DNA of 64,000 bases from Guillardia theta CCMP2712 (taxonomy: Eukaryota > Protista > Cryptophyta). The translations under genes and the position numbers were made by a program. The stretch's first letter is position 1, and every line of letters begins with the position of its first letter. This document shows, piece after piece, positions 7,095-51,924 of the stretch. The stretch is taken from contig NW_005434558.1 of NCBI RefSeq assembly GCF_000315625.1, forward strand, positions 84,002 through 148,001, read 5' to 3'. The notes beneath the pieces are model-generated. The model was not told the origin of the DNA and searched no databases. It saw nothing but the letters and a program-made list of their open reading frames with translations.

Positions 7095-10060
7095 ATGGCT
7101 GCTTTCCCCGGCGACTTCGACCCAGGGAGCGACCTGCTCTCGGGTCTTCCTCCGGGAGTGGTGGACGACTACGTGAAGCGGGTGGACGGGGACATCAAGG
7201 AGAAGAACAACAGGATCGAGCATGTTGAGACGCAGATCAAGGAGTACAAGGAGAGGATGGGGGTCATGGTGGAGCACTTGAAGAATGTGCAGCAGGAGTT
7301 GAACAACACGCAGCAGCTGATCGATGCCAAGAACAAGGAGCTGGACACGGAGGAACATCTGCAGCAGCTGGCTCAGAGGGAGGTGGGGAGGATCATCCAG
7401 GAGATCGGGAAGTCGGAGAGGAAAGTGTTCGATCTGCAGGACAGGCTGAACTTGACTCAGAACTACATCTTCCGCGGCAACGAGAAGATGGACCAGTTTA
7501 AGATCCAGATGAACTGGAACCAGGAGGAGATCGAGCAGTGGGCGCTGGCAGCGAAGCAGAAGGAGGAGGACAACCTTGCTCTCGAGAAGTACAAGCGGGC
7601 AGACGACCTGAAGATCAAGGAGATGAATCTCAACCTCGAGAAGCTGACCAAGCAAGTGTCCACCAAGGAGCAGGAGCTGGAGAACGAGGTGACGGAGACG
7701 CAGACAGCTCAGATCATGCTGGACAAGACAGCGGCCGACTTCAAGATCCTCCACAGCGAGCGGCAGGAGCTGGTGAACCAATGGGAGCAGGCGATCGAGG
7801 CCATGAAGAGGAGAGACGAGATGATACAGCAGGTGGGGGAGGCGCTGCTGGCCAAGAAGGCGGACCTGGCAGAGCAGGAGAGGATCCTTGAAGAGAAGAA
7901 GCTCTTCCTCAGCGAGCAGGAGCAGGAGAACGAGGCCGTGCAGAAGCAGACAGTGGAGGCAGAGAAGGTGGTGCAGAGGTATCGGGCGATGCTGCAGCAG
8001 AGACGCAGAACAAGCAGAACCTGCAGGACGAGCTGGAAATAGTCCGCACGACCCTGGCCAAAGTCGCGTCCGAGCTCTCCCTCAAGAGGGTCCATGTTGC
8101 GAACGGGAAGGCAGAGCTGGAGCAGAAAAGGGACCGGCTGGAGGTGGTCAGGAGGAAGCAGGCGGAGACGAAGAAGCGGCTGGAGAACGAGTACCTCGCC
8201 ACCAACGACCTGGAGAAGTCGGCACACCAGATTGAGATGATCAACAGGGAGCAGGAGAAGACGCTCAAGAGCACGGAGAAGGAGCTGGTGGCGCTGAAGC
8301 AAGAGATGTTCAAGCAGTCGCAGGAGCTCTTCAACCTGCGCAAGGATGAGGCGAACCTGATCGCTGAGATCTCGGGGGCTCAGAGTGCGGACAGGAACCT
8401 GAGGGACAAGATCAAGTCGTTGGATGCGGAGTCTCAGAAGCAGCAGGAGCACATCTACAACGCTGACTTTGCGCTCCAGCAGATGGAGAGGAAAGTGTCG
8501 AGAGCTCAGGTGGAGATCCTTGTGTCCCATGCCCATCCCCACCCCACTTGATCTGACGCCATCCTTGTTACCTTTCTTCCTCCTCCTCTCCTCCTCTCCT
8601 CTCCTCTCCTCTCCTCTCCTCTTCTCCTCTCCTCTCCTCTCCTCTCCTCTCCTCTCCTTCTCTCCCTTTCCCCTTCCCATCCAACACCCTCCCCTCCCTT
8701 CTCTTCTCTCCGTCGTCATCGCAGATTGCTCATGATGGCCTCCTAACCTTGTCACAGGGCGAGTACCGAGCTGACGAGAAGGAGGCGCTGCAGTCGAAGA
8801 TCTCTCAGCTGGAGCAGATGCTGACGGCGACGGATCAGGAGGAGAGGATGCTGAAGAAGCAGCTGAAGAAGGTCAACGACGACTACAGGCAGGCGAAGCG
8901 GCAGGTCGACGACCTCAACAACGAGAAGTCCTCGCTCGACGACAAGGCGCACGAGCTGCAGCTGGAGAACGAGGTGGTGGCCCGGACCTGGAGGACGTGC
9001 ATCAAGCAGAAGGAGGAGTACATAGTCCAGCACGACCTGCTCAAGTTGGAGGTCAAGAAGCTGCGGGACAGGCTCAATGACAGGGCAGACGAGGTGTCTG
9101 GCCTGCAGAACCGTAAGTTCCAGCTGCAGAAGACGATGGAGGAGAGGACGCTGGAGGTCAAAGCACAGCAGGAGGTCCTTCGGTCGGACTTGAAGATGGC
9201 GCAGGAGGAGCTGCATACGGTGGTGATGGAGCTGAGGGACAGGGAGATGAAAGCTGGGACGCTGCAGAAGAAGCTTGACCTTCTCAACGACAAGATGCGC
9301 GCGGAGCTGGGGGGTGAGGAGGAGAGGAAGAGCCCAGCGTACTACGTGGTCCTTCGGGCGCAGGAGAGGGAGGAGCTGCAGAAGGAGGGGGACGAGCTGG
9401 ATGCTAGGATCCAGAAGGCGGAGAAGGAGATCCGAGCGCTGGAGAACACTCTGGCGAAGTTCAACGCCAAGAACGACAAGTTGCGATCCTCCTTCAGGCA
9501 GTCGGATGGCTCGGGAGCAGACTCAGAGGCGAAGCTTGAGCTGGAGGCGAAGCTGGAGAGGCTGCTGGAAAGGAAGAGGCAGAAGAAGGCTGAGGCTGAC
9601 ACTCTGGCCGCCGACGTCTCGGAGATGCGGCAGAGGCTGTCGAACCTGCTGGCGGAGGAGGAGGGGATGAGGAGGCACGTGAAGCTGGTGCAGGGGAAGG
9701 CGAAGCAGTTCGACAAGGAGAGGGAGGAGCTGCTGGCCAAGAGGGACCGGGCGAGGGCATCGCTGGACAGGCACTCCAAGAGGCTGCGGCAGGCAAGGGG
9801 GGCGTCGGGGGAGACGGAAGAGGAGCGCTCGTTCAGGCTGGCATCGATGAGGGAAGAGAACAAGAACATGCTCTACGTGATTATGTCGCTCAAGGACGAG
9901 TTCCCCGACCTCGCTGGAATCATCGACGATGCCGTGCAGAGCAACGGCATTGCACCCCCTTCCCGTCCTCCCAGCGCCCGATCGGAGGTAAGAGACGGAG
10001 GTGTCGAGACGCAGGTTAAATTTATTGCAGGTTTCCTCTATTGGAAGCACGACTTCGTGA
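7095..10060 (+). CDS. CCDC39: coiled-coil domain-containing protein 39 (axonemal 96-nm ruler subunit, FAP59)
   Basis: Family motifs MVEHLKNVQQEL..TQQL..AK..E..TEEHL.QLA.RE.GR, IFRGNEKMDQFK.QMNWNQEE.EQW, S.AYYV..AQEREELQ.EGDELDA.I.KAEKEIRALENTL. Introns ~8509-8756 and ~9988-10030; frame break near 8000. Confidence 0.92.
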
Positions 10061-28249: not shown

Positions 28250-31200
28250 CAGTGGCTTGATGTACCTTGAAACACATCAGCTGGATGGCAATACTTTTTC
28301 CTCGCTCACTTGTCGTCTAATCTCCTCCATATGCGATGCAGTTTGCTTCTGTGCGCTTTTGAACTCTCTTGACTCATCAACTGCACAAGAACCAAGAAAA
28401 AGAAGGAGGAGAAGGGGGCAGGATGAGAAAGAAGGAGCAGAAGGGGGAGAAAGAAGAAGGAAAGAGGAGGAGGGAGGAGGAGGGAGGAAGAGACGCGCTG
28501 TGAGAGGGCTTGAGAAACAAGGAAATCATTCTTATCAACATGATGCGCAAGGTCCAAATGTTCCCTTTCAATGCCTGCAATGTTCTGTTTCAGCTTCATC
28601 GCGTATCTCTCACTCCCATTTCAATCCTCATCCTCCTCCTCCTCCTCCTCCTCCTCCTCCTCCTCCTCATTATCATGTGTGTTATGCAATCACCTGAGTT
28701 TGGAGTCTCATGTTGATACGTGATGAGCGAGTCGATACGGAGAAAGATCGAGCCTCTGCATACGTTCGCATCCCATCACTCGCAACTCGACAAGTTGAGG
28801 TGCAACCTTGTGATTGGCTGAAGGAAGGAAGCGACGAGTCCGCACGGCACCAGTCGCAGGAAGCATGGCGGGAGGAGGAAGTGAGATCGCGTTGCACATG
28901 ACACGCATGATAGAGGAACTCACGTTCGCCCCGTGATCCTGACTGACGAAGGTTGGAATCTTGAGCAGTCGCAGCACAGGAGCTGTTAGCTGTGAGCACA
29001 GGGAGGTCAATCAAGGCAAGAAGGTAGCACGGGAGGAATGTTTCTGACCTGGCCGAGGAACACGTTGGTGAAGAGGATAATAACGACGACGCAAGGGATG
29101 ATGTAAGTTCGGTTGGGGCCTTGGAAGGTGAGGGAGAGGGCGAAGGCAATGGCTCCCCTATTGAACATGACGATGGTCAGCTGATGGATGGAGAATGAGG
29201 GAAAGTGCAAGAGAGAAGCCAGAAGAACATTTTGTTGTTGCTGTTGCTTTTGCTGTTGTTATGAATGGTGGTGGTGGTGGTGGTGGTGGTAATATGATAA
29301 CAATGATGATTTTTTTTTTACCTCAACCCAGCAAACCAGATCATCAACATGTTCTTGAAGCTGATACGAGTTTCTTGTGCGTGACCTGACCTGTGAAGCA
29401 ATGCATAGAATAAGTTGTCTTCTTTTCGGGTTTGGAGTTTGCTCCTGCTCCTGCTCCTGTTACTGCTCCTGCTCCTGCTTCTGCTCCTGCTCCTGCTCCT
29501 GCTCCTGCACCCTTTGCTCTCGTTCCCGCCCTTGCTCTTCCTTCCTTTCTCTTCCGCTCCTCACCTCTTGCAAGTATTGAGCAACCAGCACAAGAAAAAC
29601 ACGTTCGCTCCTGCAACACGTCAATCTCCTCACCTCTCCTCGTCAAGACCGGCACGCAATGACTCACTTGATATCAAACAGAGCACGATTGACCAGCCCA
29701 CGAAGCACCAGTCCAAGACAAACTTCGGTTCTCCCTATGAAATCAAATGGCGTTAGTATCAGTAAACTTTCCTCCTCCTGACTCGCCAACAACCACTCTT
29801 AGCCTTCCTCCCGTTGCTCTCTTCTCCTACCTGCTTGTTGCTGTTGCAGTGAGGTAAGATGGTCGGCAGGATGTTGAAACCAAAGAAGATGAAAACAGAT
29901 GTCTCACTGCGCCGATGAGCTTTCATCATGATCTCCTCAACAGTCATTTTTGCATGCTGTCAACCTCAAGTACGCTAATGTTCGAGCGACGTTGTGAGCT
30001 GTCTCTTTGCCGTCATGGCTGTCGTTGCAAGAATGCAATGCATTCAATTTCACCAACAGAAGTGAAAGTGTTGTATGATTGACAAGATAGAGGGTAGACG
30101 ATGAGAAGTACAATCGTATCATTCATGAGAGAACGAGTAGATGAAAGAAGAGGTAAATGAGGGAACAAGGTGATAAGAAAGAGTTGTGAATGGTCACACC
30201 TGAGGTTGTATTTGGTGTAATGTGACATTATCACTCCGCAGAAGAAGATGCTCATGAGTCCAGAAACCTGACAACACACGTCAGAGGAGCGACGAGAGGA
30301 CAATCAGGACCTTGATAGCGTCGGCAAAGATGAAACTGAGATATGCGACGCTCAACACGATTGTGACCTGCCAGTTGGAGGGGGAGCAATTAACGCAGCG
30401 GTAGAAACAACATTGAAAGCAACACATTGGATGTACACAACTAATGTTCGGAATAAGATTGACAAACACCTCGAGTAGAGATGGATCTTTAGTACAGACG
30501 TCTCAAACACAAAATCTGGCATAAACAAGGAGGCGATCATATCCAGAACAAACTTCATGCTCATCCAAAACAATCTTCCCACTTAAAAACATCTCACTCA
30601 CACTGGTATGTTCACGTCCTTACCTCACTGTGCGGAGCTCCATCCTTGATGACCCTCTTTGTGATAAATGCCGACAGCATCCCAAACAAGGCCCCGACCA
30701 CCACAGATCCGATAGACTGAAGGCTGGCGGTCAACGAGACTGACACTGAAGCTAGCAAGCGACAGAGCAGGGAGTCTCACAACGATAAGGAAGTTGACGA
30801 AAGCGTCCAAGGCCTGCCAATGGCGGGATAAGCTCAAGACAACTGAAATGATCCCTGGCTGACATCCTCGTCTCTAGAGCTACAGAATCGTGCAATGACT
30901 CTTTCCTTCTGTGACAAATTCTCCCACCCACCCTCCCACCCTCTTCCTTTCCTGCTCCTCACCTCCCATTCATTCTCTCTCTCTCTCTCTCTCTCTNNNN
31001 NNNNNNNNNNNNNNNNNNNNNNNNNNNNNNNNNNNNNNNNNNNNNNNNNNNNNNNNNNNNNNNNNNNNNNNNNNNNNNNNNNNNNNNNNNNNNNNNNNNN
31101 NNNNNNNNNNNNNNNNNNNNNNNNNNNNNNNNNNNNNNNNNNNNNNNNNNNNNNNNNNNNNNNNNNNNNNNNNNNNNNNNNNNNNNNNNNNNNNNNNNNN

Positions 31201-33215
31201 NNNNNNNNNNNNNNNNNNNNNNNNNNNNNNNNNNNNNNNNNNNNNNNNNNNNNNNNNNNNNNNNNNNNNNNNNNNNNNNNNNNNNNNNNNNNNNNNNNNN
31301 NNNNNNNNNNNNNNNNNNNNNNNNNNNNNNNNNNNNNNNNNNNNNNNNNNNNNNNNNNNNNNNNNNNNNNNNNNNNNNNNNNNNNNNNNNNNNNNNNNNN
31401 NNNNNNNNNNNNNNNNNNNNNNNNNNNNNNNNNNNNNNNNNNNNNNNNNNNNNNNNNNNNNNNNNNNNNNNNNNNNNNNNNNNNNNNNNNNNNNNNNNNN
31501 NNNNNNNNNNNNNNNNNNNNNNNNNNNNNNNNNNNNNNNNNNNNNNNNNNNNNNNNNNNNNNNNNNNNNNNNNNNNNNNNNNNNNNNNNNNNNNNNNNNN
31601 NNNNNNNNNNNNNNNNNNNNNNNNNNNNNNNNNNNNNNNNNNNNNNNNNNNNNNNNNNNNNNNNNNNNNNNNNNNNNNNNNNNNNNNNNNNNNNNNNNNN
31701 NNNNNNNNNNNNNNNNNNNNNNNNNNNNNNNNNNNNNNNNNNNNNNNNNNNNNNNNNNNNNNNNNNNNNNNNNNNNNNNNNNNNNNNNNNNNNNNNNNNN
31801 NNNNNNNNNNNNNNNNNNNNNNNNNNNNNNNNNNNNNNNNNNNNNNNNNNNNNNNNNTCTCTCTCTCTCTCTCACTAGCTTGCCAGCCAGCCAGCCTTCT
31901 CCCCCAACCTGTCTCTGTCTCCGTTTCTATTTCTGTCTAAAAGTCTTCCAACCCTCGCGGTTTCCTTGGACCTCACTGCCTCTGTCTCTCGTCTCTCAAC
32001 TCACCTGCGAGGAGGAGATTGAGATGTCATTCCCGTCCGGCAGGCTCAAAAACCTTCATCGCACATCAGCACACTCGGCCGAAATGACAGGCGGCAAGGC
32101 ACACACGTCTGAAACAGCACCACCGCTACAGCATCGTTGATCACGCTCTCCCCGAACACAATGGAGTACAACTGTGTATCGACGTCTAGAGATCCCATCA
32201 CTGCCAGCGTGCCTGTCGACACGAGTCACTCTGGAGCCTTAGGGAAACATGTAAGAATCTCAACCGATCGGGTCAGTAGCGCTCATCATACTACCAAACA
32301 ACAACCCTTCCTTAGGGTTCTGGCCGTTGATGCCCTTGATGTAGTTTTCCTTGGCCAAGAAAAACAGCCCTGCGTTGATGCGCAGACCTTAACAAGAGCA
32401 CGCGAATAAATCGAGCAACAAACCCAATCCAAGGATGAAGGTAGAAAGCAGAGTCCCACACACAGCCAGCGTGCAGATCGCAGCGAAGTTCTTGAAAAAG
32501 TCTTTCTGATTGAGAGCGAAACTGCTTCAATGTCATCGCAGAAGACACAGGGGAGCAAGATCCCACCCTGCTTCAAAGAGGATGGGAGGCACGAGGAATA
32601 AGAAGAAAACAGTGTCGAAGGACCCTGAAGGTAATCCCGATCAACAGCCCCGCACGTTCAAGTGGAAGCTTGCACCATGTATGGACGAGTAGTTCTCTCC
32701 ACACAGAGGAAGTGAGGCCAGAAATCCCAGGGAGATTGCGATCAGAGAATCATTCGTGTACCTGCACTCCCGTTATCAAACAATCCATCCACCCTCTCTC
32801 CTCACCAGTAGTCATTGTTCAATTTCTGGTTAGGAGACAATTTTCGTGCATCGCATCACAATCAGCACAGAGATTTGATGCACAGGACCATGGGTTCAGC
32901 ACCTGCGCCAGGTTCCCCAGGATCGTTGATAGGAGCACAAGGGAAGTAAATCCAGCCGTCACCTGCCAACCATTCTCATGACCTCCTCGTGCCATCCCCA
33001 TCGCGGACCTTGCTCGTGTTGATATCAATCACATCGTCACCTCCAGGGGCTGGTGTTGCTCCGGGCGTTTGTTGCAGCCAATCAAGCATAGGTTGTGCAG
33101 AGAGAGACAAAAAGACAGTGAAGTTTCTCAAGGTACTACCCTGCACCCTGCGTGCCCATGTGTCAGGGATTACGACTATTTGCTGGTCTGGAGGCGGGAG
33201 CCAAGGCATTCGCAA
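28250..33215 (-). CDS. Na+/H+ exchanger, CPA1 (NHX/NHE) family (many introns; boundaries approximate)
   Basis: Exons FTSLVLLSTILGNL, FFLFLVPPILFEAG, YSIVFGESVIND, SGLMSIFFCGVIMSHYTKYNL, RGAIAFALSL...VVVIILFTNVFLGQ. Confidence 0.88.
30997..31857. other. assembly gap (N run) at an intronic (CT)n repeat
   Basis: N run flanked by ctctct. Confidence 0.99.
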
Positions 33216-45658: not shown

Positions 45659-48600
45659 ATGTTCTCGCGATGTTGGCATTGCAAGGCAAGCGAGGAGCGA
45701 GGAGGCGCCTCTGTTGTTGTGCTTGTTGCATCGGATCTTCTGACTCGGTACTCATCAGATTCACATGGTTCCTGGCACCGGAGATCGCTCGAAATGCGTA
45801 CGATTGATTGATTCATCTTTGTTCGACACGTAACTCCTCTTTTTCCAAATGCGTCAAACCTGTTTTCACTCAAGGCGGTAAGCAAAGTTGTATCATTCTC
45901 AATAGAATATGCAAGGCAAAAATAATGTTGTGATCTTATGACTTGGGTTCGGAACGCCTTGTATGGATTGTTGATGGTCCTTCAGAGGGTGAGTAATGCG
46001 GAAGAGTACGATTGTAAAGGATGGGACTGACGGATATTGTTTTCAACTTTGATCATCGTTTGACGGGGCTGAGCGGGTGGATGAGGACAGCCGGTAAGAG
46101 AGGGAGAGAGAAGAGAGGAAAGAATAGGGAGTGACTCAGAGCATTTTCAACTTCGAAATTGACTTTGTCTCCTACGGTCTGGGGTGATGGGGCATGAGCA
46201 GCGGGTAAGAGAGAAGGGAGGGAGAGAAACGAGGATAGGGATTGACGGAGGGCGTTTGCAACTTGTATCGGAAATACTCTCTGGGAAAATTTTGGGATGT
46301 GGCGCTGGCATGAGCAGAAGGTAAGGAGCGAGAGGAAGAGACGGCGGGCTGACATTCGATGTTTGCAACTTCGATTGGGGATGGCCGGATGATGGTGGGG
46401 GACACGGTGCTTGACGAGGACAGCTGGTAAGTAACGGGCAGAAGAAGAGGGAGAGGGTGGAAGAGATGGAAATTGACGATGCGTGTTTGCAAATTTCATT
46501 GGGGATGGCTACATGATTGTTGGGCTTATGGTGGCAGTGGGTAAGTAATAAGAAGAGAAGAGATGGAGAGAAACATCGAAGCTGACGGATGATGTTTGCA
46601 ACTTTGATCGGAAATTGGTGGATGACTGCGGGTGGGGGGACGGGGGCTCTTGTGGGGAAAGCTTGTAAGTGACAGAGGTGGGGGAAAGGAACTGATGTTG
46701 TACGTTTGCCACTTCGATCGGGTACGGCTCCGGGGATGTGGGGGGACATGCGGCGCCGAAATAGTGGGTAAGTGACCAAGAGAGAGGAGGTAGGAAGTGA
46801 CTTTTGATGTTGCAACTCCCGACGGGGGCGCATGGGACGTTTTGTTGATCGATTGTTCTAGAGTGTAAGTAGAGAGAGAGATGAAGCAGAGAGGGGAGGA
46901 TGGGGGCTGACAGAGGGTGTTTGCAACTCTATTTCTCAATCATCGCATGACTTGTATAGCTGGTGAGTGACGAGGGGAGGAGGAGGAGGAGGAGGAGGAG
47001 GAGGAGAGAGAAACTGAAAGTACTGAACGTGGTTGCTTACAACCTTGGTTGGTGGTGATCTGGCCACTGATGGGGGGATCTGGGCCGCTGACGACGATAG
47101 ATGGTATGTAATCAGAGGATGGGAGAGAAAGCAATACACGAGGGCTGATGATGGATAAACTATCGGTGATGGCTTCGGTGCTTTGCGGGAATATGGGGCT
47201 GACGCGGACAGAGAGTAAGTGACGACGAGAGGAGGGGGCGGGAGAGAAGGATCTCTGCTGACGATGGATCTTTGCAACTTGAACCTGGGACGCTTTGGGG
47301 TGCGGTCAACGCTCTCATGGGAGTAGTGGGTGAGTCATGAGAGGGGAGGGGTTGCGAAACCGAAGGACAGGATCTGACGGTGGGTCTGTGCAACTTGGAT
47401 TGTGAATGGGCGAACGGGGGGCTGGAGGAGCTAGCTGGTGAGTGAGGAGGGAGTGCGAGGGAGAAGGAATAGGGGCTGACCGAGGGCCGTTGTTGGATCG
47501 GGGACGGCGGGGATGTTTGATGTGGACACGGTGACCTGCGAGGACAGTGGGTGAGTGACAAAGAGAGAGGAGAGTTGTGGGAACGAATATAGTCTGATGA
47601 TGGTTGGTTTCAACTCGGACTCGACTTGGAATTCTTGGATTCTCGTTTTCGATCCTTTAGGATGTAAGTTTCAAGGAGAGAGGAGGGAGGAGAAGATACT
47701 GACAAAGGAACTTTGCTTCTTGGATCGGGTGTTGGCTCGGGTTTGGGTTTGTCTTCTCAGCGGGTAAGTATCTAGGGGAGAGGATGGAAACGACATGGAC
47801 AAGGGCTGACCGATGGCCTTTGCATCTTGGATCGGGTATGGCCGGGGGCCTGGATCTAATGAGGATAGCTTGTAAGTAAGGAGGGAGAGGATAAAGAAGA
47901 GAAAAGATGTTGACTAATGCGATACCTTTTCAACTTGGATCTGGCGCACGATATACCAAACATCAATCATCTTTGATAGTTGGTGAGTGATGACAAGAGA
48001 AGAGGAGGAGGGAAGAGACGAAGGGAGCAAAGGAAGAACGAAAGGATTGGGACTGACTGGAGATTTCGCATTACAACTTGATTCGGTAAACCATGGGACT
48101 CTTGACAAGTGCAGTGGGTAAGATAAAACAACAGAGAGAGAGTGGAGGATGATAGGAGCTGACTGTGGGTCTATGCTATCTTGATGCGGCACTCATTACC
48201 TGGTCTCTACATCTGTTTGTATAGAGTGTGAGTATGGAGGAGAGACAAGGGTGGGATCGAGCAGATTAGCAAGCTGACGCTGCGTCTATGCAACTTCGAT
48301 CGGGGATCTGTCTCGTCGGCTGCTATGCGGGGCGGTGGGATCATCGGACCTTGGGCTTGCGGGCACAGCTGGTTAGTAACCAGGATAGCGGAGGAGTGGC
48401 TAGGCTAGGGGCTGACGGTGGATGGTTTGCAACTTCCATCGGCTGGGCTATGTGGAACACATATGGCATATGGGGACAGTGGGTAAGTGTCAAGGAGGGA
48501 GACACGGGGGGGGGGGGAAGGGAATAGGGAGCTGACGAAGGGTGTTTGAAACTTGGATCGGATCGGGGACGGCTGGGGCCATGGGGACTGACGAGGACAG

Positions 48601-51600
48601 CCTGTAAGTAGGGAGGAGGGAGGAGGGAGGAGGGAGGAGGGAGGAGGGAGGAGGATAGCGTGCTGACGGAGGATGTTTGCTTCTTGGATCGGGGACGCGG
48701 GGGCTTACGTGGACAGTGGGTGAGTGCGGAGCAGAGAGAGGGGGAGAGAGGAAGGATGGCGAGCTGACTGAGGACGTTTGAAACTTGGATCGGGGACTGG
48801 CGCTTGTGGTTTGGACACGGAACATGGGGCTATGAGGACAGCTTGTGAGTATAGAGGGGAGAGGATGTAGGAGGGCAGGGGCTGACGATGGTGTTTGCAA
48901 CTTGGATCGGGGGCGGTCGCACGGCAATGTTGGGGGCCGCTTGAGGATAGCTTGTGAGTATTGAGGAGAGAAGAAGGGAGCGAGGAGGGAAGGGACTGAC
49001 AGAGGGTGTTTGCATCATGGATCTGGGCCGACTTGTCATGGGGCTAACGGTGGTAGCTCGTAAGTGTGAGCACGATTCAAGGAAGAAAGGGGCTGACGAC
49101 GTATGTTTGCGACTTGTATCGGGGATGGGCGCGTCGGGGGACATGGGACTGACAGGGACAGCTTGTAAGTAACGAGGAGGGAGAAAGGGAGTCAGGAGAG
49201 TGCAAGCTGACAATGGATGTTTACACACTTTGATTGTGGACGAATCGATGATGGGTTGGATGTTTCGAATACGAGGACAGCTGGTACGTAAGGAGGAGAG
49301 GAGAAAGGAGAGAGAAGGAATGGCGCTTATTTTGGCGTTTCCAACTTGGGTCGGGGACTGACGCGTGGGCGGGGGACATTGGATGATAACATGGACAGTT
49401 GGTAAGTAAAGGAGAGGCGAGGAGACGAGACGAGACGAGACGAGACGAGACGAGACGAGAGGAGAGGAGAGGATAATGTAGGCTGACCATGACTGTTGGA
49501 TTTTGGATCGGGAACGACTGGATCACGGGCTGGGAATGGGCTACGAGAATAGCTGGTATGCAAGGAGGAGAGAGATGGAATAAGCTAAGCTAGCGGGAGC
49601 TGACGGAGGGTTCGCAATTTGCACGATCGGAACTATGGGGACGGGGACAATGCTTGATGGCGCGGACAGCTGGTGAGTAAAGGAGAGAGTAGAGAGGAAA
49701 GAAGAAGAGAGGATTTCTAATGATTTGATATTTACATCTTGGATCGGGAAATGCCGGCGTTGCGGGGAACTTGGGGTTTACGAGGATAGCCCAATGTAAG
49801 TATCGAGAAAGGAAAGTGGGAGAGGCAACGATAGGTTGACTGTTGGTGTTGCCAATTTGATTCGGGGCGGCTGGGGTGATGGAAACATGGACCGACATGG
49901 TTAGCTGGTATGTGATGAGGGGAGAGGGCGGAGAAAGAGAAGGATAGGAGCTTACATGAAATCTTCATAACTCGGCTTGGGATGGCACTTGGGTCGATAA
50001 ATTTGCATTGGGCTGACGAGGACAGCGGGTAAGTGGCGAGGAGAGAAGAGGCCTCAGATGGAAGGAAATTGACTGAGGGTTTTTGTTCAAATGGTACGGA
50101 ATCTTCGCAGTGCTGTGTAAGTTGTTCGTGTCTTGATATTCTGTCACTGTGATATTGATTTTTTGGGGGTTCGCTACCATGATGACAGCAAGTAAGTTCG
50201 TCGGCTGATCTTTGGCTATTCGTCTCCTTAGATTGCCTTTCAGTGCTCCAAGTGGAATTGGTTGCCGTTACAACTCCAGGTCTGTTGCCATACCGGTCTG
50301 CTCTATCAGCTGATGGATCCTGTTGGTAGCGAGGGTGCGACCAGTGTGAAGAACGGCAAAGTCAACAAATACCAAGGGCGAGGCAGGGAGTCGAGATTCG
50401 AAGCCAGCAGGGAACAAGTCAGAGCCAGAATGCAGCTGGTAAAAAATTGGATTGGAGAGAGAAAAAACTGTTGGAAGACAGGCAGAAATCAATCGACAGG
50501 GAAAGGGAGCATAAAAGGATAAACCAGGAAGAGGAAAGGCGGCGGCGGCAGCAACAGCCTTGGAAGCAGCAGCCGCCACAACGGCAGCCGCCGCCGCCGC
50601 CGCAAACACCGCCGCCGCCAACACCGCCAACACCGCCAATACCGCCGCTACAACAGCAGCAGGAGCAGCTGTGGTTGCAGCGGCTACTTAGTCAGCTGGT
50701 GCCGGAGCCGAGATTGGACGAGCGAAGGGATCACAACAACGTCATGCAGCAGGTCATCACTAACATCTCTAGAGCCTCGAAGTATCTTGACATTCCTTGT
50801 TTCAGCCCGATGCCATTCCATGGGTAGACTTTCGAGTCTTCAACATTGTGAAGTATTTCAACTCTGGTTCTTTCAAGACTGTGTTCCATGGTCAATGGAA
50901 GAAGTCTTGTGGATACACTGATGTTGCCATCCTTCAAATCAGAAACAGTAGAGCTGCTGGAAGAAGAGAGGAGTTCGAGCGGGAGGTGCAGACATTCAAG
51001 ACTCTGGGCCTTCATTCCAACCTCCTTCGACTCCTCGCCATCACCACCGAGCCGAAATCTGGTGACTTCTGCATGGTAACAGAGTTTGCTTCCATGGGTT
51101 CGTTGGACACACATTTGTCGGAACTTGCCGAAAGGAAGACGACGATCAGTCCGTTGGTGCAGCTGCAAGTGGCCATGCAGATTTGTGAAGGGATGGTACA
51201 GCTTGCCCTGTATGAGGTGGTGCATCGAGACCTCGCAGCAAGGAACGTGCTTGTCTTCAGTCTAGTCCCGCAGGATCACCTCAGGGTGAACGTCAAGATA
51301 GCCGACTATGGGCTGTCGATCATGGCCTCCCGCGGGTATGGAGAAGGAGCTGGGGGCGTGAGCACGGCAGGATCGACAATTCGACCAGTCCGATGGTTGG
51401 CACCAGAATGTATTCAGCGACGACGTTACTCGGAGAAGAGCGATGTGTGGGCGTTCGGCGTTACCCTATGGGAGGTGTGGACATACGCTAAAGTTCCGTT
51501 CTACAACACTTCAGATGAAGAAGTGGAACAGAAGGTGCTCACGGGCTCGCGACTTTCTCAGCCCCAGTCATGCCCTGATCAAGTATACAGCATCATGCAG

Positions 51601-51924
51601 GAATGCTGGAAGGAGAAGCAGTCAGACCGGCCAGAATTCAAAGATTTGAAGTTGAAGCTACAAGGGCAATATGATGAAGCCCTTAGAAGTCAAGCAATAG
51701 AGAGCGTCATGAAAGATAGCAACAGATGCAAGAGACCGCGAGAGGACGACGGAGCTGGAGAAGACGACGACAACATGTGCGTCATCTGCAATGAAAGAGA
51801 GCGCAGGTGGGCCTTCCTGCCCTGCGGTCACAGGTGCCTCTGCGATCTGTGCAATACCGCAGCGGCTACGAGGCTTTGTCCCATGTGTCGCGCGCCCCCT
51901 AGCAGCATGCACAGGATCTACTGA
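45659..51924 (+). CDS. micro-exon gene: Cys-rich/hydrophobic N-terminus built from 39 micro-exons, Q/P-rich linker, tyrosine-kinase-type domain, C-terminal RING-HC
   Basis: Model: 45659-45685 (MFSRCWHCK; GC donor), 45759-45797, 39 micro-exons 45875-50191, 50232-50279, 50330-50752, 50806-51924. All junctions are phase 0 and the frame stays open throughout. Confidence 0.7.
45875..50191 (+). repeat. tandem array of ~115-bp degenerate intron + micro-exon units
   Basis: Typical unit: GT(A/G)AGT - purine tract - GCTGAC - tttgcaacttggatcggg - G-rich - (ggac)AG|NNN|GT. Confidence 0.92.
50806..51924 (+). CDS. protein kinase exon with tyrosine-kinase signatures plus C3HC4 RING
   Basis: HRDLAARN, KIADYGLS, RPVRWLAPE, SDVWAFGVTLWE, CW...RP.F; RING CVIC...FLPCGHRCLCDLC.......CPMCR. 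Confidence 0.95.
   Translation, partial: PDAIPWVDFRVFNIVKYFNSGSFKTVFHGQWKKSCGYTDVAILQIRNSRAAGRREEFEREVQTFKTLGLHSNLLRLLAITTEPKSGDFCMVTEFASMGSLDTHLSELAERKTTISPLVQLQVAMQICEGMVQLALYEVVHRDLAARNVLVFSLVPQDHLRVNVKIADYGLSIMASRGYGEGAGGVSTAGSTIRPVRWLAPECIQRRRYSEKSDVWAFGVTLWEVWTYAKVPFYNTSDEEVEQKVLTGSRLSQPQSCPDQVYSIMQECWKEKQSDRPEFKDLKLKLQGQYDEALRSQAIESVMKDSNRCKRPREDDGAGEDDDNMCVICNERERRWAFLPCGHRCLCDLCNTAAATRLCPMCRAPPSSMHRIY

What the first reader, a model, noticed from the sequence alone, without database searches (positions are those of the whole stretch)
45659..50350. The micro-exon array sits inside a CxxC knuckle of a putative double zinc ribbon: possible zinc-finger vs membrane-anchor switch
Flanking exons give C-W-H-C-KIHMVPGTGDRSK-C|[array]|C-C-Q-IAFQ-C-S-K-W-NWLPLQLQRG-C-D-Q-C. 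If only two codons are taken between the Cys at 45795 and the tgctgt exon (e.g. gcg+agg = CARC), a double-zinc-ribbon-like pattern CxxC..CxxC..CxxW..CxxC appears. If all are included, a Trp/Leu-rich hydrophobic helix (WSLWPWLLLLLLLL) is inserted instead. Inference: the exons could be near mutually exclusive single-residue alternatives (Dscam-like), or inclusion level could toggle soluble vs membrane-bound kinase. This depends on a by-eye GC-AG first intron (45686-45758).
Basis: inference. Interest (0 to 1): 0.8.

Follow-up and report, generated by a model that had tools for sequence, protein, structure and literature searches.

The report
Single-codon exon array splitting a cysteine motif
In a Guillardia theta kinase-RING gene, about 40 to 50 one-codon exons are all spliced together in the transcripts seen, placing a Trp/Leu-rich hydrophobic stretch at the junction of a conserved double cysteine motif, so it looks like a permanent insert, not the proposed zinc-finger/membrane switch.

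Summary
Public transcript contigs of Guillardia theta confirm the GC-AG first intron, exon 2 and every predicted micro-exon, joined in genomic order.

One correction: the exon after CAA starts at 50244, not 50232. 'IAFQ' is therefore intronic and the protein reads CCQC-x13-CDQC.

A metagenomic cryptophyte homologue (L007) has the same exon layout and an uninterrupted CTIC-x13-C-YPR-CCNC-x13-CSHC, with only two one-codon exons at that spot. Hanusia P0033 also has an unbroken double motif. The G. theta array sits where those homologues have 0-3 residues.

The switch idea is not supported. Assembled contigs cannot exclude a rare isoform.

Transcripts carry 69 more in-frame bases than the window, probably a collapsed or copy-variable block. 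The insert is then about 62 residues: two predicted helices, the second transmembrane-like.

Retention of intron 40 (50117-50188, in-frame TGA) is the commoner RNA form and a likelier control point.

The scan noted this same array in other first-stage notes. I found no paper describing it.

The parts
45659..45685 (+). Exon 1: ATG plus the first Cys pair (M-F-S-R-C-W-H-C-K)
   Evidence: L002 starts at CDS nt 9 and reads through it.
45686..45758 (+). Intron 1, GC-AG, 73 nt
   Evidence: Removed in L002. An X5 contig has the loose end TGGCATTGCA before 45757.
45759..45797 (+). Exon 2 (I-H-M-V-P-G-T-G-D-R-S-K-C): the 13-residue spacer and the third Cys of the first half-motif
   Evidence: L002 20-58 is identical.
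45798..45988 (+). Two AT-richer introns not of the array type (77 and 108 nt), and micro-exons GCG (45875-45877) and AGG (45986-45988)
   Evidence: both codons are in L002.
45989..50028 (+). Array proper: 35 G-rich introns of 94-151 nt from one diverged family, each followed by one codon (once 6 nt, CCCAAT at 49790-49795; once 9 nt at 49156-49164). These are micro-exons 3-37, CCG at 46091 to CGG at 50026.
   Evidence: Mean pairwise intron identity is 51% and the maximum 73%. All units keep GT..AG and the 3n spacing. All codons are present in order in L002.
49156..49164 (+). 9-nt form of micro-exon 30 (GGACAGCTT), using the acceptor 6 nt upstream of the one predicted
   Evidence: Seen in L001, L002, X4 and X8.
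50111..50116 (+). 6-nt exon TGCTGT (Cys-Cys), start of the second half-motif; homologous to TGCTGC in L007
50117..50188 (+). Intron 40, 72 nt, with an in-frame TGA; retained in the commoner RNA form
   Evidence: Retained in L001 and L002. Contig depth retained vs spliced: X4 31.7 vs 5.8, X8 4 vs 2.7.
50189..50191 (+). 3-nt exon CAA (Gln); counterpart of AAT in L007
50244..50279 (+). 36-nt exon (C-S-K-W-N-W-L-P-L-Q-L-Q); counterpart of the 36-nt exon of L007. It starts at 50244, not 50232.
   Evidence: Joint 50191>50244 in X4, X5 and X8; L001 and L002; L007 model.
50330..50752 (+). Exon with R-G-C-D-Q-C (last Cys pair), then a charged coiled-coil-like stretch and a Pro/Gln-rich linker
   Evidence: Joints. 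No Pfam family and no word-search relatives.
50806..51924 (+). Kinase (PK_Tyr_Ser-Thr) plus C-terminal C3HC4 RING, then the stop codon
   Evidence: Pfam E-values 3e-68 and 3.4e-13; transcript identity 100%. The 3' UTR reaches at least 52179.

Best explanation
This is the 5' coding region of a Guillardia theta kinase-RING gene.

The family has an N-terminal two-part cysteine motif: C-x2-C-x13-C, then 0-3 residues, then CC-x-C-x13-C-x2-C. In a related cryptophyte, the short linker between the two halves is already encoded by two one-codon exons flanked by introns of about 100 nt.

In G. theta that spot grew by repeated duplication of the unit 'one intron + one codon'. Each duplication adds exactly one residue and cannot break the frame. 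The assembly holds 37 such exons before the Cys-Cys exon; the transcripts hold about 12 more codons plus 33 nt.

The introns are removed one by one, apparently in no fixed order, since partly spliced RNAs keep scattered single introns. All codons stay in the mRNA. This builds a Trp/Leu-rich insert of about 62 residues (A-R-P-R-K...P-N-L-R).

Steps that are inferred: the insert forms two helices, the second transmembrane-like, so it acts as a constitutive membrane-anchoring or membrane-associated segment next to a juxtamembrane Cys-Cys. Paralogues with ordinary transmembrane segments have a comparable layout.

It is not an on/off choice between a zinc finger and an anchor. If the gene is regulated by splicing, the likelier point is intron 40, whose retention puts a stop codon in front of the kinase.
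For: Shown.
- All 39 predicted micro-exons are present in order in transcript L002, with the GC-AG intron removed. Segments of the same chain appear in L001 and in contigs of three runs from three studies.
- No joint skips the array.
- The frame is unbroken from the ATG to the kinase stop.
- Array introns average 51% identity with no neighbour effect, yet all 35 keep GT..AG, a GTRAGT-like donor and 3n spacing. This points to long-term selection for correct splicing and frame.
- Codon positions depart strongly from intron base composition. C or T is at position 1 in 28 of 34 codons. A at position 2 occurs in only 2 of 34. Hydrophobic codons are 24 of 34, against 24% expected.
- L007 has the same 6|3|36-nt exon layout and an uninterrupted double motif. 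Its introns share the composite motif TGAC-N5-10-TTTGC-like: 3 hits in about 350 nt, against 6 in about 255 kb of control sequence counted on both strands.
- P0033 and P0011 carry the motif without any insert.

Inferred.
- Hydropathy gives a transmembrane-like stretch at about residues 58-82: Kyte-Doolittle 1.64 and Wimley-White octanol -17 kcal/mol per 19 residues.
- AlphaFold2 on the single sequence gives two helices, mean pLDDT 67.8.
- Paralogue L003 has a hydrophobic segment just before the kinase. Hanusia P0014 has a transmembrane segment followed by Y-C-C.
Against: - The RNA evidence is assembled contigs at low depth (2-37x), not counted molecules. Contigs drop rare variants, so a minor skipping isoform is not excluded.
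- The JGI contigs and run X4 may come from the same raw data.
- The only raw-read RNA run (X16) gave 4 reads.
- The commoner RNA form keeps intron 40 with a stop, so much of the RNA cannot make the anchor-kinase fusion.
- The first half of the insert holds Arg and Asp residues and is a poor transmembrane helix.
- The units share ancestry, so the composition p-values are inflated.
- Neither membrane location, zinc binding nor acylation was tested.
Confidence: 0.65

Rival explanations
1. Regulated skipping of most or all array exons gives a short isoform (C-A-R-C-C-Q-C) with an intact double zinc-binding motif. Full inclusion gives a membrane-anchored isoform.
For: The short form would recreate the spacing seen in homologues: L007 C-Y-P-R-C-C and P0033 C-C. 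Any subset of the 3n exons keeps the frame. Contigs cannot exclude rare forms.
Against: No skipping joint appears in any of five contig sets, and all show serial inclusion. Skipping would need a 4.1-kb intron in a gene whose introns are 50-151 nt. The hydrophobic codon bias and the 35 of 35 intact splice sites argue that the included form is the selected one.
Confidence: 0.08
2. Tolerated runaway expansion. The array is a frame-neutral minisatellite of 'intron + codon' with no function of its own. The N-terminal fusion is dispensable, and the kinase is mostly made from RNAs that start or re-initiate downstream.
For: Duplication of a unit that leaves 3 nt is frame-neutral by construction. The transcripts differ from the assembly by a block of about 12 units, so copy number is still changing. 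Intron 40 retention with a stop is the commoner form, and depth rises 5- to 10-fold 3' of the array. Leu and Trp codons could partly reflect descent from CTG and TGG ancestors.
Against: Neutral intron positions are at compositional saturation (about 50% identity), while splice sites, 3n spacing and the hydrophobic codon set are all kept. A is rare at exon position -2, where donor consensus usually favours A; that consensus is general knowledge and was not tested for G. theta.
Confidence: 0.2
3. The chain is read in the other open frame, from the ATG at 45669. This gives a short Ala/Val/Ser/Glu-rich peptide not joined to the kinase, acting as an upstream ORF.
For: JGI's gene caller called L002 1-273 as a 90-residue ORF in that frame. 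The A-poor micro-exons leave several frames free of stops.
Against: The first ATG (45659) opens the frame that runs unbroken into the kinase. That frame also carries the Cys motif shared with L007, P0011 and P0033.
Confidence: 0.05

Closest known systems
Constitutive ultra-short micro-exons (1-15 nt) of plants and animals, e.g. the 1-nt exons of APC11 and VPS55, adjacent 5-nt and 12-nt exons in rice, and three consecutive micro-exons (3, 18, 22 bp) in human RPS24
   Same: Exons far below the size for exon definition are nevertheless included. They are flanked by strong GTRAGT donors and are routinely missed by annotation (PMC8831610; RPS24 abstracts). Here the NCBI model is a 212-residue kinase fragment.
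   Different: Known cases in the papers I found are single exons or runs of two or three. Here 39 (window) to about 50 (transcripts) lie in an unbroken series, 37 of them one codon, made by tandem duplication of one intron family.
Dscam-type arrays of mutually exclusive exons
   Same: A tandem array of duplicated exon-plus-intron units inside one gene.
   Different: In Dscam one variant is chosen per transcript. Here all units are included in series, so the defining behaviour is not met.
Introners and introner-like elements (multi-copy introns spread through genomes)
   Same: Many introns come from one sequence family, with conserved internal motifs and similar length.
   Different: Introners are dispersed in many genes. 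This family was found only in tandem at one locus. nhmmer found no copy in the rest of the window or in three paralogue loci, and related introns were seen only at the same spot in the homologue L007.
Recursive splicing (zero-length exons, AG|GT ratchet points)
   Same: Acceptor and donor lie almost back to back, so neighbouring introns must be handled stepwise. Partly spliced intermediates are abundant.
   Different: Three nucleotides remain in the mRNA at each site and are translated. The sites do not serve to remove one long intron.
Zinc ribbon and other CxxC...CxxC zinc knuckle modules
   Same: Paired Cys knuckles are spaced by 13 residues, doubled in tandem, and conserved in four family members.
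   Different: No Pfam, PDB-sequence or Foldseek match. One knuckle is CxC or CC. The Cys-Cys next to a hydrophobic segment could instead be an S-acylation site. Metal binding is untested.

Membership tests
Micro-exons, constitutive | Internal exon of 30 nt or less, flanked by spliceosomal introns | tested here: met
   There are 39 exons of 3, 6 or 9 nt between GT(GC)..AG introns.
Micro-exons, constitutive | Present in mature or maturing RNA | tested here: met
   All are in L002 in order. Segments are in L001 and in X4, X5 and X8.
Mutually exclusive or cassette exon array (Dscam-like switch) | Transcripts carry one unit, or a varying subset, of the array | tested here: not met
   Only serial inclusion was seen, with no skipping joint. 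Rare isoforms cannot be excluded from contigs.
Zinc ribbon / double zinc knuckle | Two pairs of Cys (CxxC-like) separated by about 10-20 residues, conserved among relatives | tested here: met
   The second half is CCQC-x13-CDQC, matching P0011 CCNC-x13-CRHC and L007 CCNC-x13-CSHC. The first half is CWHC-x13-C, matching L007 CTIC-x13-C.
Zinc ribbon / double zinc knuckle | Fourth ligand of the first module within a few residues of the third | tested here: not met
   In the transcripts the next Cys is about 62 residues after Cys22. In L007 the gap is 3 residues.
Zinc ribbon / double zinc knuckle | Recognised fold or profile | tested here: inconclusive
   No Pfam hit and no PDB sequence hit. The AF2 model of P0033:1-48 has pLDDT 64.9, and the best Foldseek E-value is 5.7.
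Zinc ribbon / double zinc knuckle | Binds zinc | not testable with these tools
   Needs metal analysis of recombinant protein.
Introner-like elements | Near-identical intron copies dispersed in many unrelated genes | tested here: not met
   A profile of the 35 units found nothing in about 59 kb of the window outside the locus or in 63 kb of paralogue loci. The units are only 51% alike. The whole genome was not searchable.
Membrane-anchored (receptor-like) kinase | Hydrophobic segment of about 19 or more residues N-terminal to the kinase | tested here: met
   Residues about 58-82 score Kyte-Doolittle 1.64 and Wimley-White -17 kcal/mol; helix in the AF2 model.
Membrane-anchored (receptor-like) kinase | Actual membrane insertion and topology | not testable with these tools
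   Needs fractionation, or tagging and imaging.
Protein kinase (PK_Tyr_Ser-Thr) with C3HC4 RING | Pfam domains above the gathering score | tested here: met
   PF07714 scores 230 bits and PF13920 scores 49.6 bits.

The most novel reading that the evidence does not exclude
Two readings together.

(1) The spliceosome of G. theta handles about 50 back-to-back one-codon exons. It may be helped by a dedicated intronic element, CTGAC-N8-TTTGCAACTTGGATCGGGG, that is conserved with another cryptophyte at the same gene position. The array would then be a codon-by-codon, copy-number-variable way to grow a hydrophobic protein segment.

(2) The two predicted helices form a membrane hairpin that brings Cys22 back next to the Cys-Cys pair. 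The split metal-binding motif could then still close around a membrane-embedded insert.
Probability: 0.2. Interest if true: 0.9.

Novelty: new variant of a known kind. Interest (0 to 1): 0.75.

Why it matters
One-codon exons are known as rare single oddities. A series of 40 to 50 of them, all included, would be by far the longest run I could find in the literature.

- It gives a natural test bed for how acceptor and donor sites 3 nt apart can both be used.
- It lets one ask whether intron removal has an order, and what the conserved intronic motif does.
- It shows a route of protein evolution that cannot frameshift: duplicating 'intron + codon'. Here that route turned a 0-3-residue linker inside a Cys motif into a hydrophobic segment of about 62 residues.
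- It is a warning for annotation. The public gene model is a fragment, and the assembly seems to lack about 12 units.

Tried and rejected
- Tandem Repeats Finder does not see the roughly 110-nt period, because the units are too diverged.
- The raw-read RNA run X16 gave only 4 reads.
- The word search with the linker exon (50330-50749) found no relatives. The search with the P0011 N-terminus found only itself.
- Pfam found nothing on the N-terminal pieces. The PDB sequence search found nothing. Foldseek on a weak model of P0033:1-48 gave no match.
- Three G. theta paralogue loci (L003-L005) have no array. They have other N-termini, one with an LRR-like region and a hydrophobic segment.
- An exact scan of JGI metagenome contigs for exon 2 gave 0 hits.
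- The scan for the intron motif gave 8 single hits without arrays, about the number expected by chance by my own estimate.
- An nhmmer profile of the array units did not reach L007's introns. Only the composite motif count links them.
- Exon repetition or trans-splicing from the window's own DNA was rejected as the source of the extra 69 nt. The extra block has variant codons (ATG for TGG, CTT for CTC, CCG) that the window lacks at those places.
Full report
**Organism and gene**

The kinase-RING exon (50806-51924) has Pfam PK_Tyr_Ser-Thr (E 3e-68) and zf-C3HC4_3 (E 3.4e-13). Its 100%-identical protein cluster holds a UniRef entry named for Guillardia theta and a 212-residue NCBI fragment on a 213,589-nt scaffold. 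The window is therefore G. theta nuclear DNA, and the public gene model covers only part of the kinase. The nearest relatives are G. theta paralogues and Hanusia phi proteins at 55-66% identity.

**The observation**

Between 45797 and 50244 the + strand holds 40 introns and 39 exons of 3 nt (37 cases) or 6 nt (2 cases).
- The pattern AG+NNN+GTRAGT occurs 37 times on the + strand in the array. It occurs twice on the - strand of the whole window and nowhere else on the + strand.
- Thirty-five introns (45989-50025) belong to one G-rich family of 94-151 nt. The consensus is GTAAGT, a purine-rich tract, GCTGAC, about 8 nt, TTTGCAACTTGGATCGGGG, a G-rich tract, then often CTGACGAGGACAG.
- The units are only 51% alike on average (maximum 73%), with no extra likeness between neighbours. 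This explains why Tandem Repeats Finder misses the period.
- The first two introns and the last three are of other kinds.

**RNA evidence**

I had one read-laying run. Three runs from three studies (X4, X5, X8; Logan contigs) show ordinary spliced joints at 50191>50244, 50279>50330 and 50752>50806, so they are RNA.

They also show joints whose 'letters between' are exactly the predicted micro-exon codons in order:
- X4: 48371 to 49156, with TGG CCT TGG CTT CTT CTC between.
- X8 and X4: after 49555, CTG CCC AAT CTG CGG TGC TGT CAA TG.
- X5: after 47214, TGG CTG TGG GAT CGG CTT TTG, followed by further codons that are not the window's next micro-exons (see the extra block below).

Two transcript contigs from JGI sample 3300017164 match the gene at 100%.
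- L002 starts at CDS nt 9 and lacks the GC-AG intron.
- It holds exon 2 and then micro-exons 1-20 exactly.
- Next comes an extra 69 nt, then micro-exons 21-38 as one exact block, with exon 30 in its 9-nt form.
- Then follow intron 40 unspliced, CAA, and the rest of the gene to the 3' UTR.
- L001 is a less spliced form that keeps introns 32, 35, 38 and 40 while their neighbours are gone. Intron removal is therefore not strictly 5' to 3'.

No contig joins exon 2, or AGG, to TGCTGT.

- The acceptor in use is at 50243, so 'IAFQ' is intronic and the peptide is CCQC-SKWNWLPLQLQRG-CDQC.
- Micro-exon 30 is 9 nt (G-Q-L).
- The extra 69 nt is ATG AGT CTG, then 33 nt equal to window 48447-48479, then TGG CCT TGG CTT CTT CTT CCG CTT CTG. 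It parallels micro-exons 21-31 but with variant codons. It must come from DNA that the window lacks: a recent duplication of about 12 units collapsed in the assembly, or a copy-number difference.
- The 75-nt gap (48372-48446) is not GT-AG, so it is probably a deletion in that copy.

**The protein**

The window model gives 588 codons in one frame. The transcript-based form gives 613. The N-terminus has this order:
1. M-F-S-R-CWHC, a 13-residue spacer, then Cys22.
2. An insert of about 62 residues, rich in Trp and Leu.
3. CCQC, 13 residues, CDQC.
4. A charged and a Pro-rich linker, then the kinase and the RING.

Hydropathy marks residues about 58-82 as transmembrane-like: Kyte-Doolittle 1.64 and Wimley-White octanol -17 kcal/mol per 19 residues. 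Residues about 28-46 are weaker and carry Arg and Asp. AlphaFold2 on the single sequence gives two helices, 24-48 and 54-82 of the 84-residue piece, with mean pLDDT 67.8. This is weak evidence.

**Is the double Cys motif real?**

- P0011 starts M-M-G-E-P-M-A-M-M-P-L-CCNC-x13-CRHC, followed by a coiled coil, the kinase and the RING.
- Hanusia P0033 has CKC-x10-CC-x11-CACQHC.
- L007, a 2.9-kb genomic contig from an ENA metagenome, is the most telling.
  - Its exon layout is ..CTIC-x13-C-Y | CCG | CGC | TGCTGC | AAT | a 36-nt exon | KACSHC.., all with GT..AG introns of 57-109 nt.
  - The 6|3|36-nt layout is the same as in the window (TGCTGT | CAA | 36 nt).
  - The encoded motif is CTIC-x13-C-Y-P-R-CCNC-x13-CSHC.
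  - Its introns share the array's composite motif TGAC-N5-10-TTTGC-like: 3 hits in about 350 nt, 14 in the array, and 6 in about 255 kb of control sequence counted on both strands. An nhmmer profile did not reach them.

The short, uninterrupted state exists in relatives, already with two one-codon exons.

Whether the motif binds zinc is open. The Cys-Cys next to a hydrophobic segment also fits S-acylation. That is an inference from general knowledge, and Hanusia P0014 has a transmembrane segment followed by Y-C-C.

**Switch or constant insert?**

All RNA seen includes the codons in series.

Selection also points to the included form.
- Intron positions away from the splice signals are near the background base composition.
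- Yet 35 of 35 units keep their splice sites and 3n spacing.
- The three exon positions depart strongly from intron composition (chi-square p from 2e-12 to 6e-4).
- Only 2 of 34 codons have A at position 2.
- Hydrophobic codons are 24 of 34, against 24% expected.

The units share descent, so these p-values are overstated.

A minor skipping isoform cannot be excluded from contigs. I give it 0.08.

**A likelier control point**

Intron 40 (72 nt) carries an in-frame TGA. It is retained in both JGI contigs and is the deeper contig form: X4 31.7 against 5.8, X8 4 against 2.7, and X5 retained only. Much of the RNA therefore ends the upstream frame before the kinase.

**Known or new**

Full-text searches found no paper joining Guillardia with micro-exons, and none on long runs of one-codon exons. 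Known cases are single exons down to 1 nt, two adjacent exons in rice (PMC8831610), and three in RPS24.

Other first-stage notes of this scan describe the same array. I confirm it with RNA, and I contradict the note that proposes combinatorial skipping.

**Limits**

- The RNA evidence is contigs, not counts, and the JGI contigs and X4 may share raw data.
- No whole-genome search of G. theta was possible.
- Membrane location, metal binding and acylation are untested.

Noticed in passing
window 48115-49283; L002 119-187: Transcripts hold an extra in-frame 69 nt (12 codons plus 33 nt equal to 48447-48479) between micro-exons 20 and 21. The block parallels micro-exons 21-31 but has variant codons. 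The assembly probably collapsed a recent duplication of about 12 units, or strains differ in copy number.
   Followed up: partly
window 50117-50188: Intron 40 (72 nt, in-frame TGA) is retained in both JGI transcript contigs and is the deeper contig form in X4, X5 and X8. It may be a detained intron that gates production of the full-length protein.
   Followed up: partly
window 45989-50025; L007 127-530: The array introns have a conserved internal element, GCTGAC-N8-TTTGCAACTTGGATCGGGG, about 60-70 nt upstream of the acceptor. A related form occurs in the introns flanking the one-codon exons of the metagenomic homologue L007.
   Followed up: partly
window 45669 onward; L002 1-273: A second frame, from the ATG at 45669, stays open through the whole micro-exon chain. 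JGI called it as a 90-residue ORF. The cause is that the micro-exons are almost free of A.
   Followed up: partly
window 50944-50964: The kinase has V-A-I-L-Q-I-R where the usual V-A-I-K strand lysine would be, while the catalytic loop is HRDLAARN. Another first-stage note covers this.
   Followed up: no
L003 about 9700-10000: The G. theta paralogue P0005 is annotated as kinase only. In frame just upstream it has an LRR-like stretch and a hydrophobic segment, so the public model looks truncated.
   Followed up: no
window 50587-50628: The CCG/CAA-rich Pro-coding repeat also matches much deeper unrelated contigs in X5 and X8 (depth 36-100). This is a low-complexity cross-match that inflates depth in that bin.
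   Followed up: no
window 30001-32000: GC content drops to 0.27 in this 2-kb bin, against 0.47-0.61 in the rest of the window.
   Followed up: no
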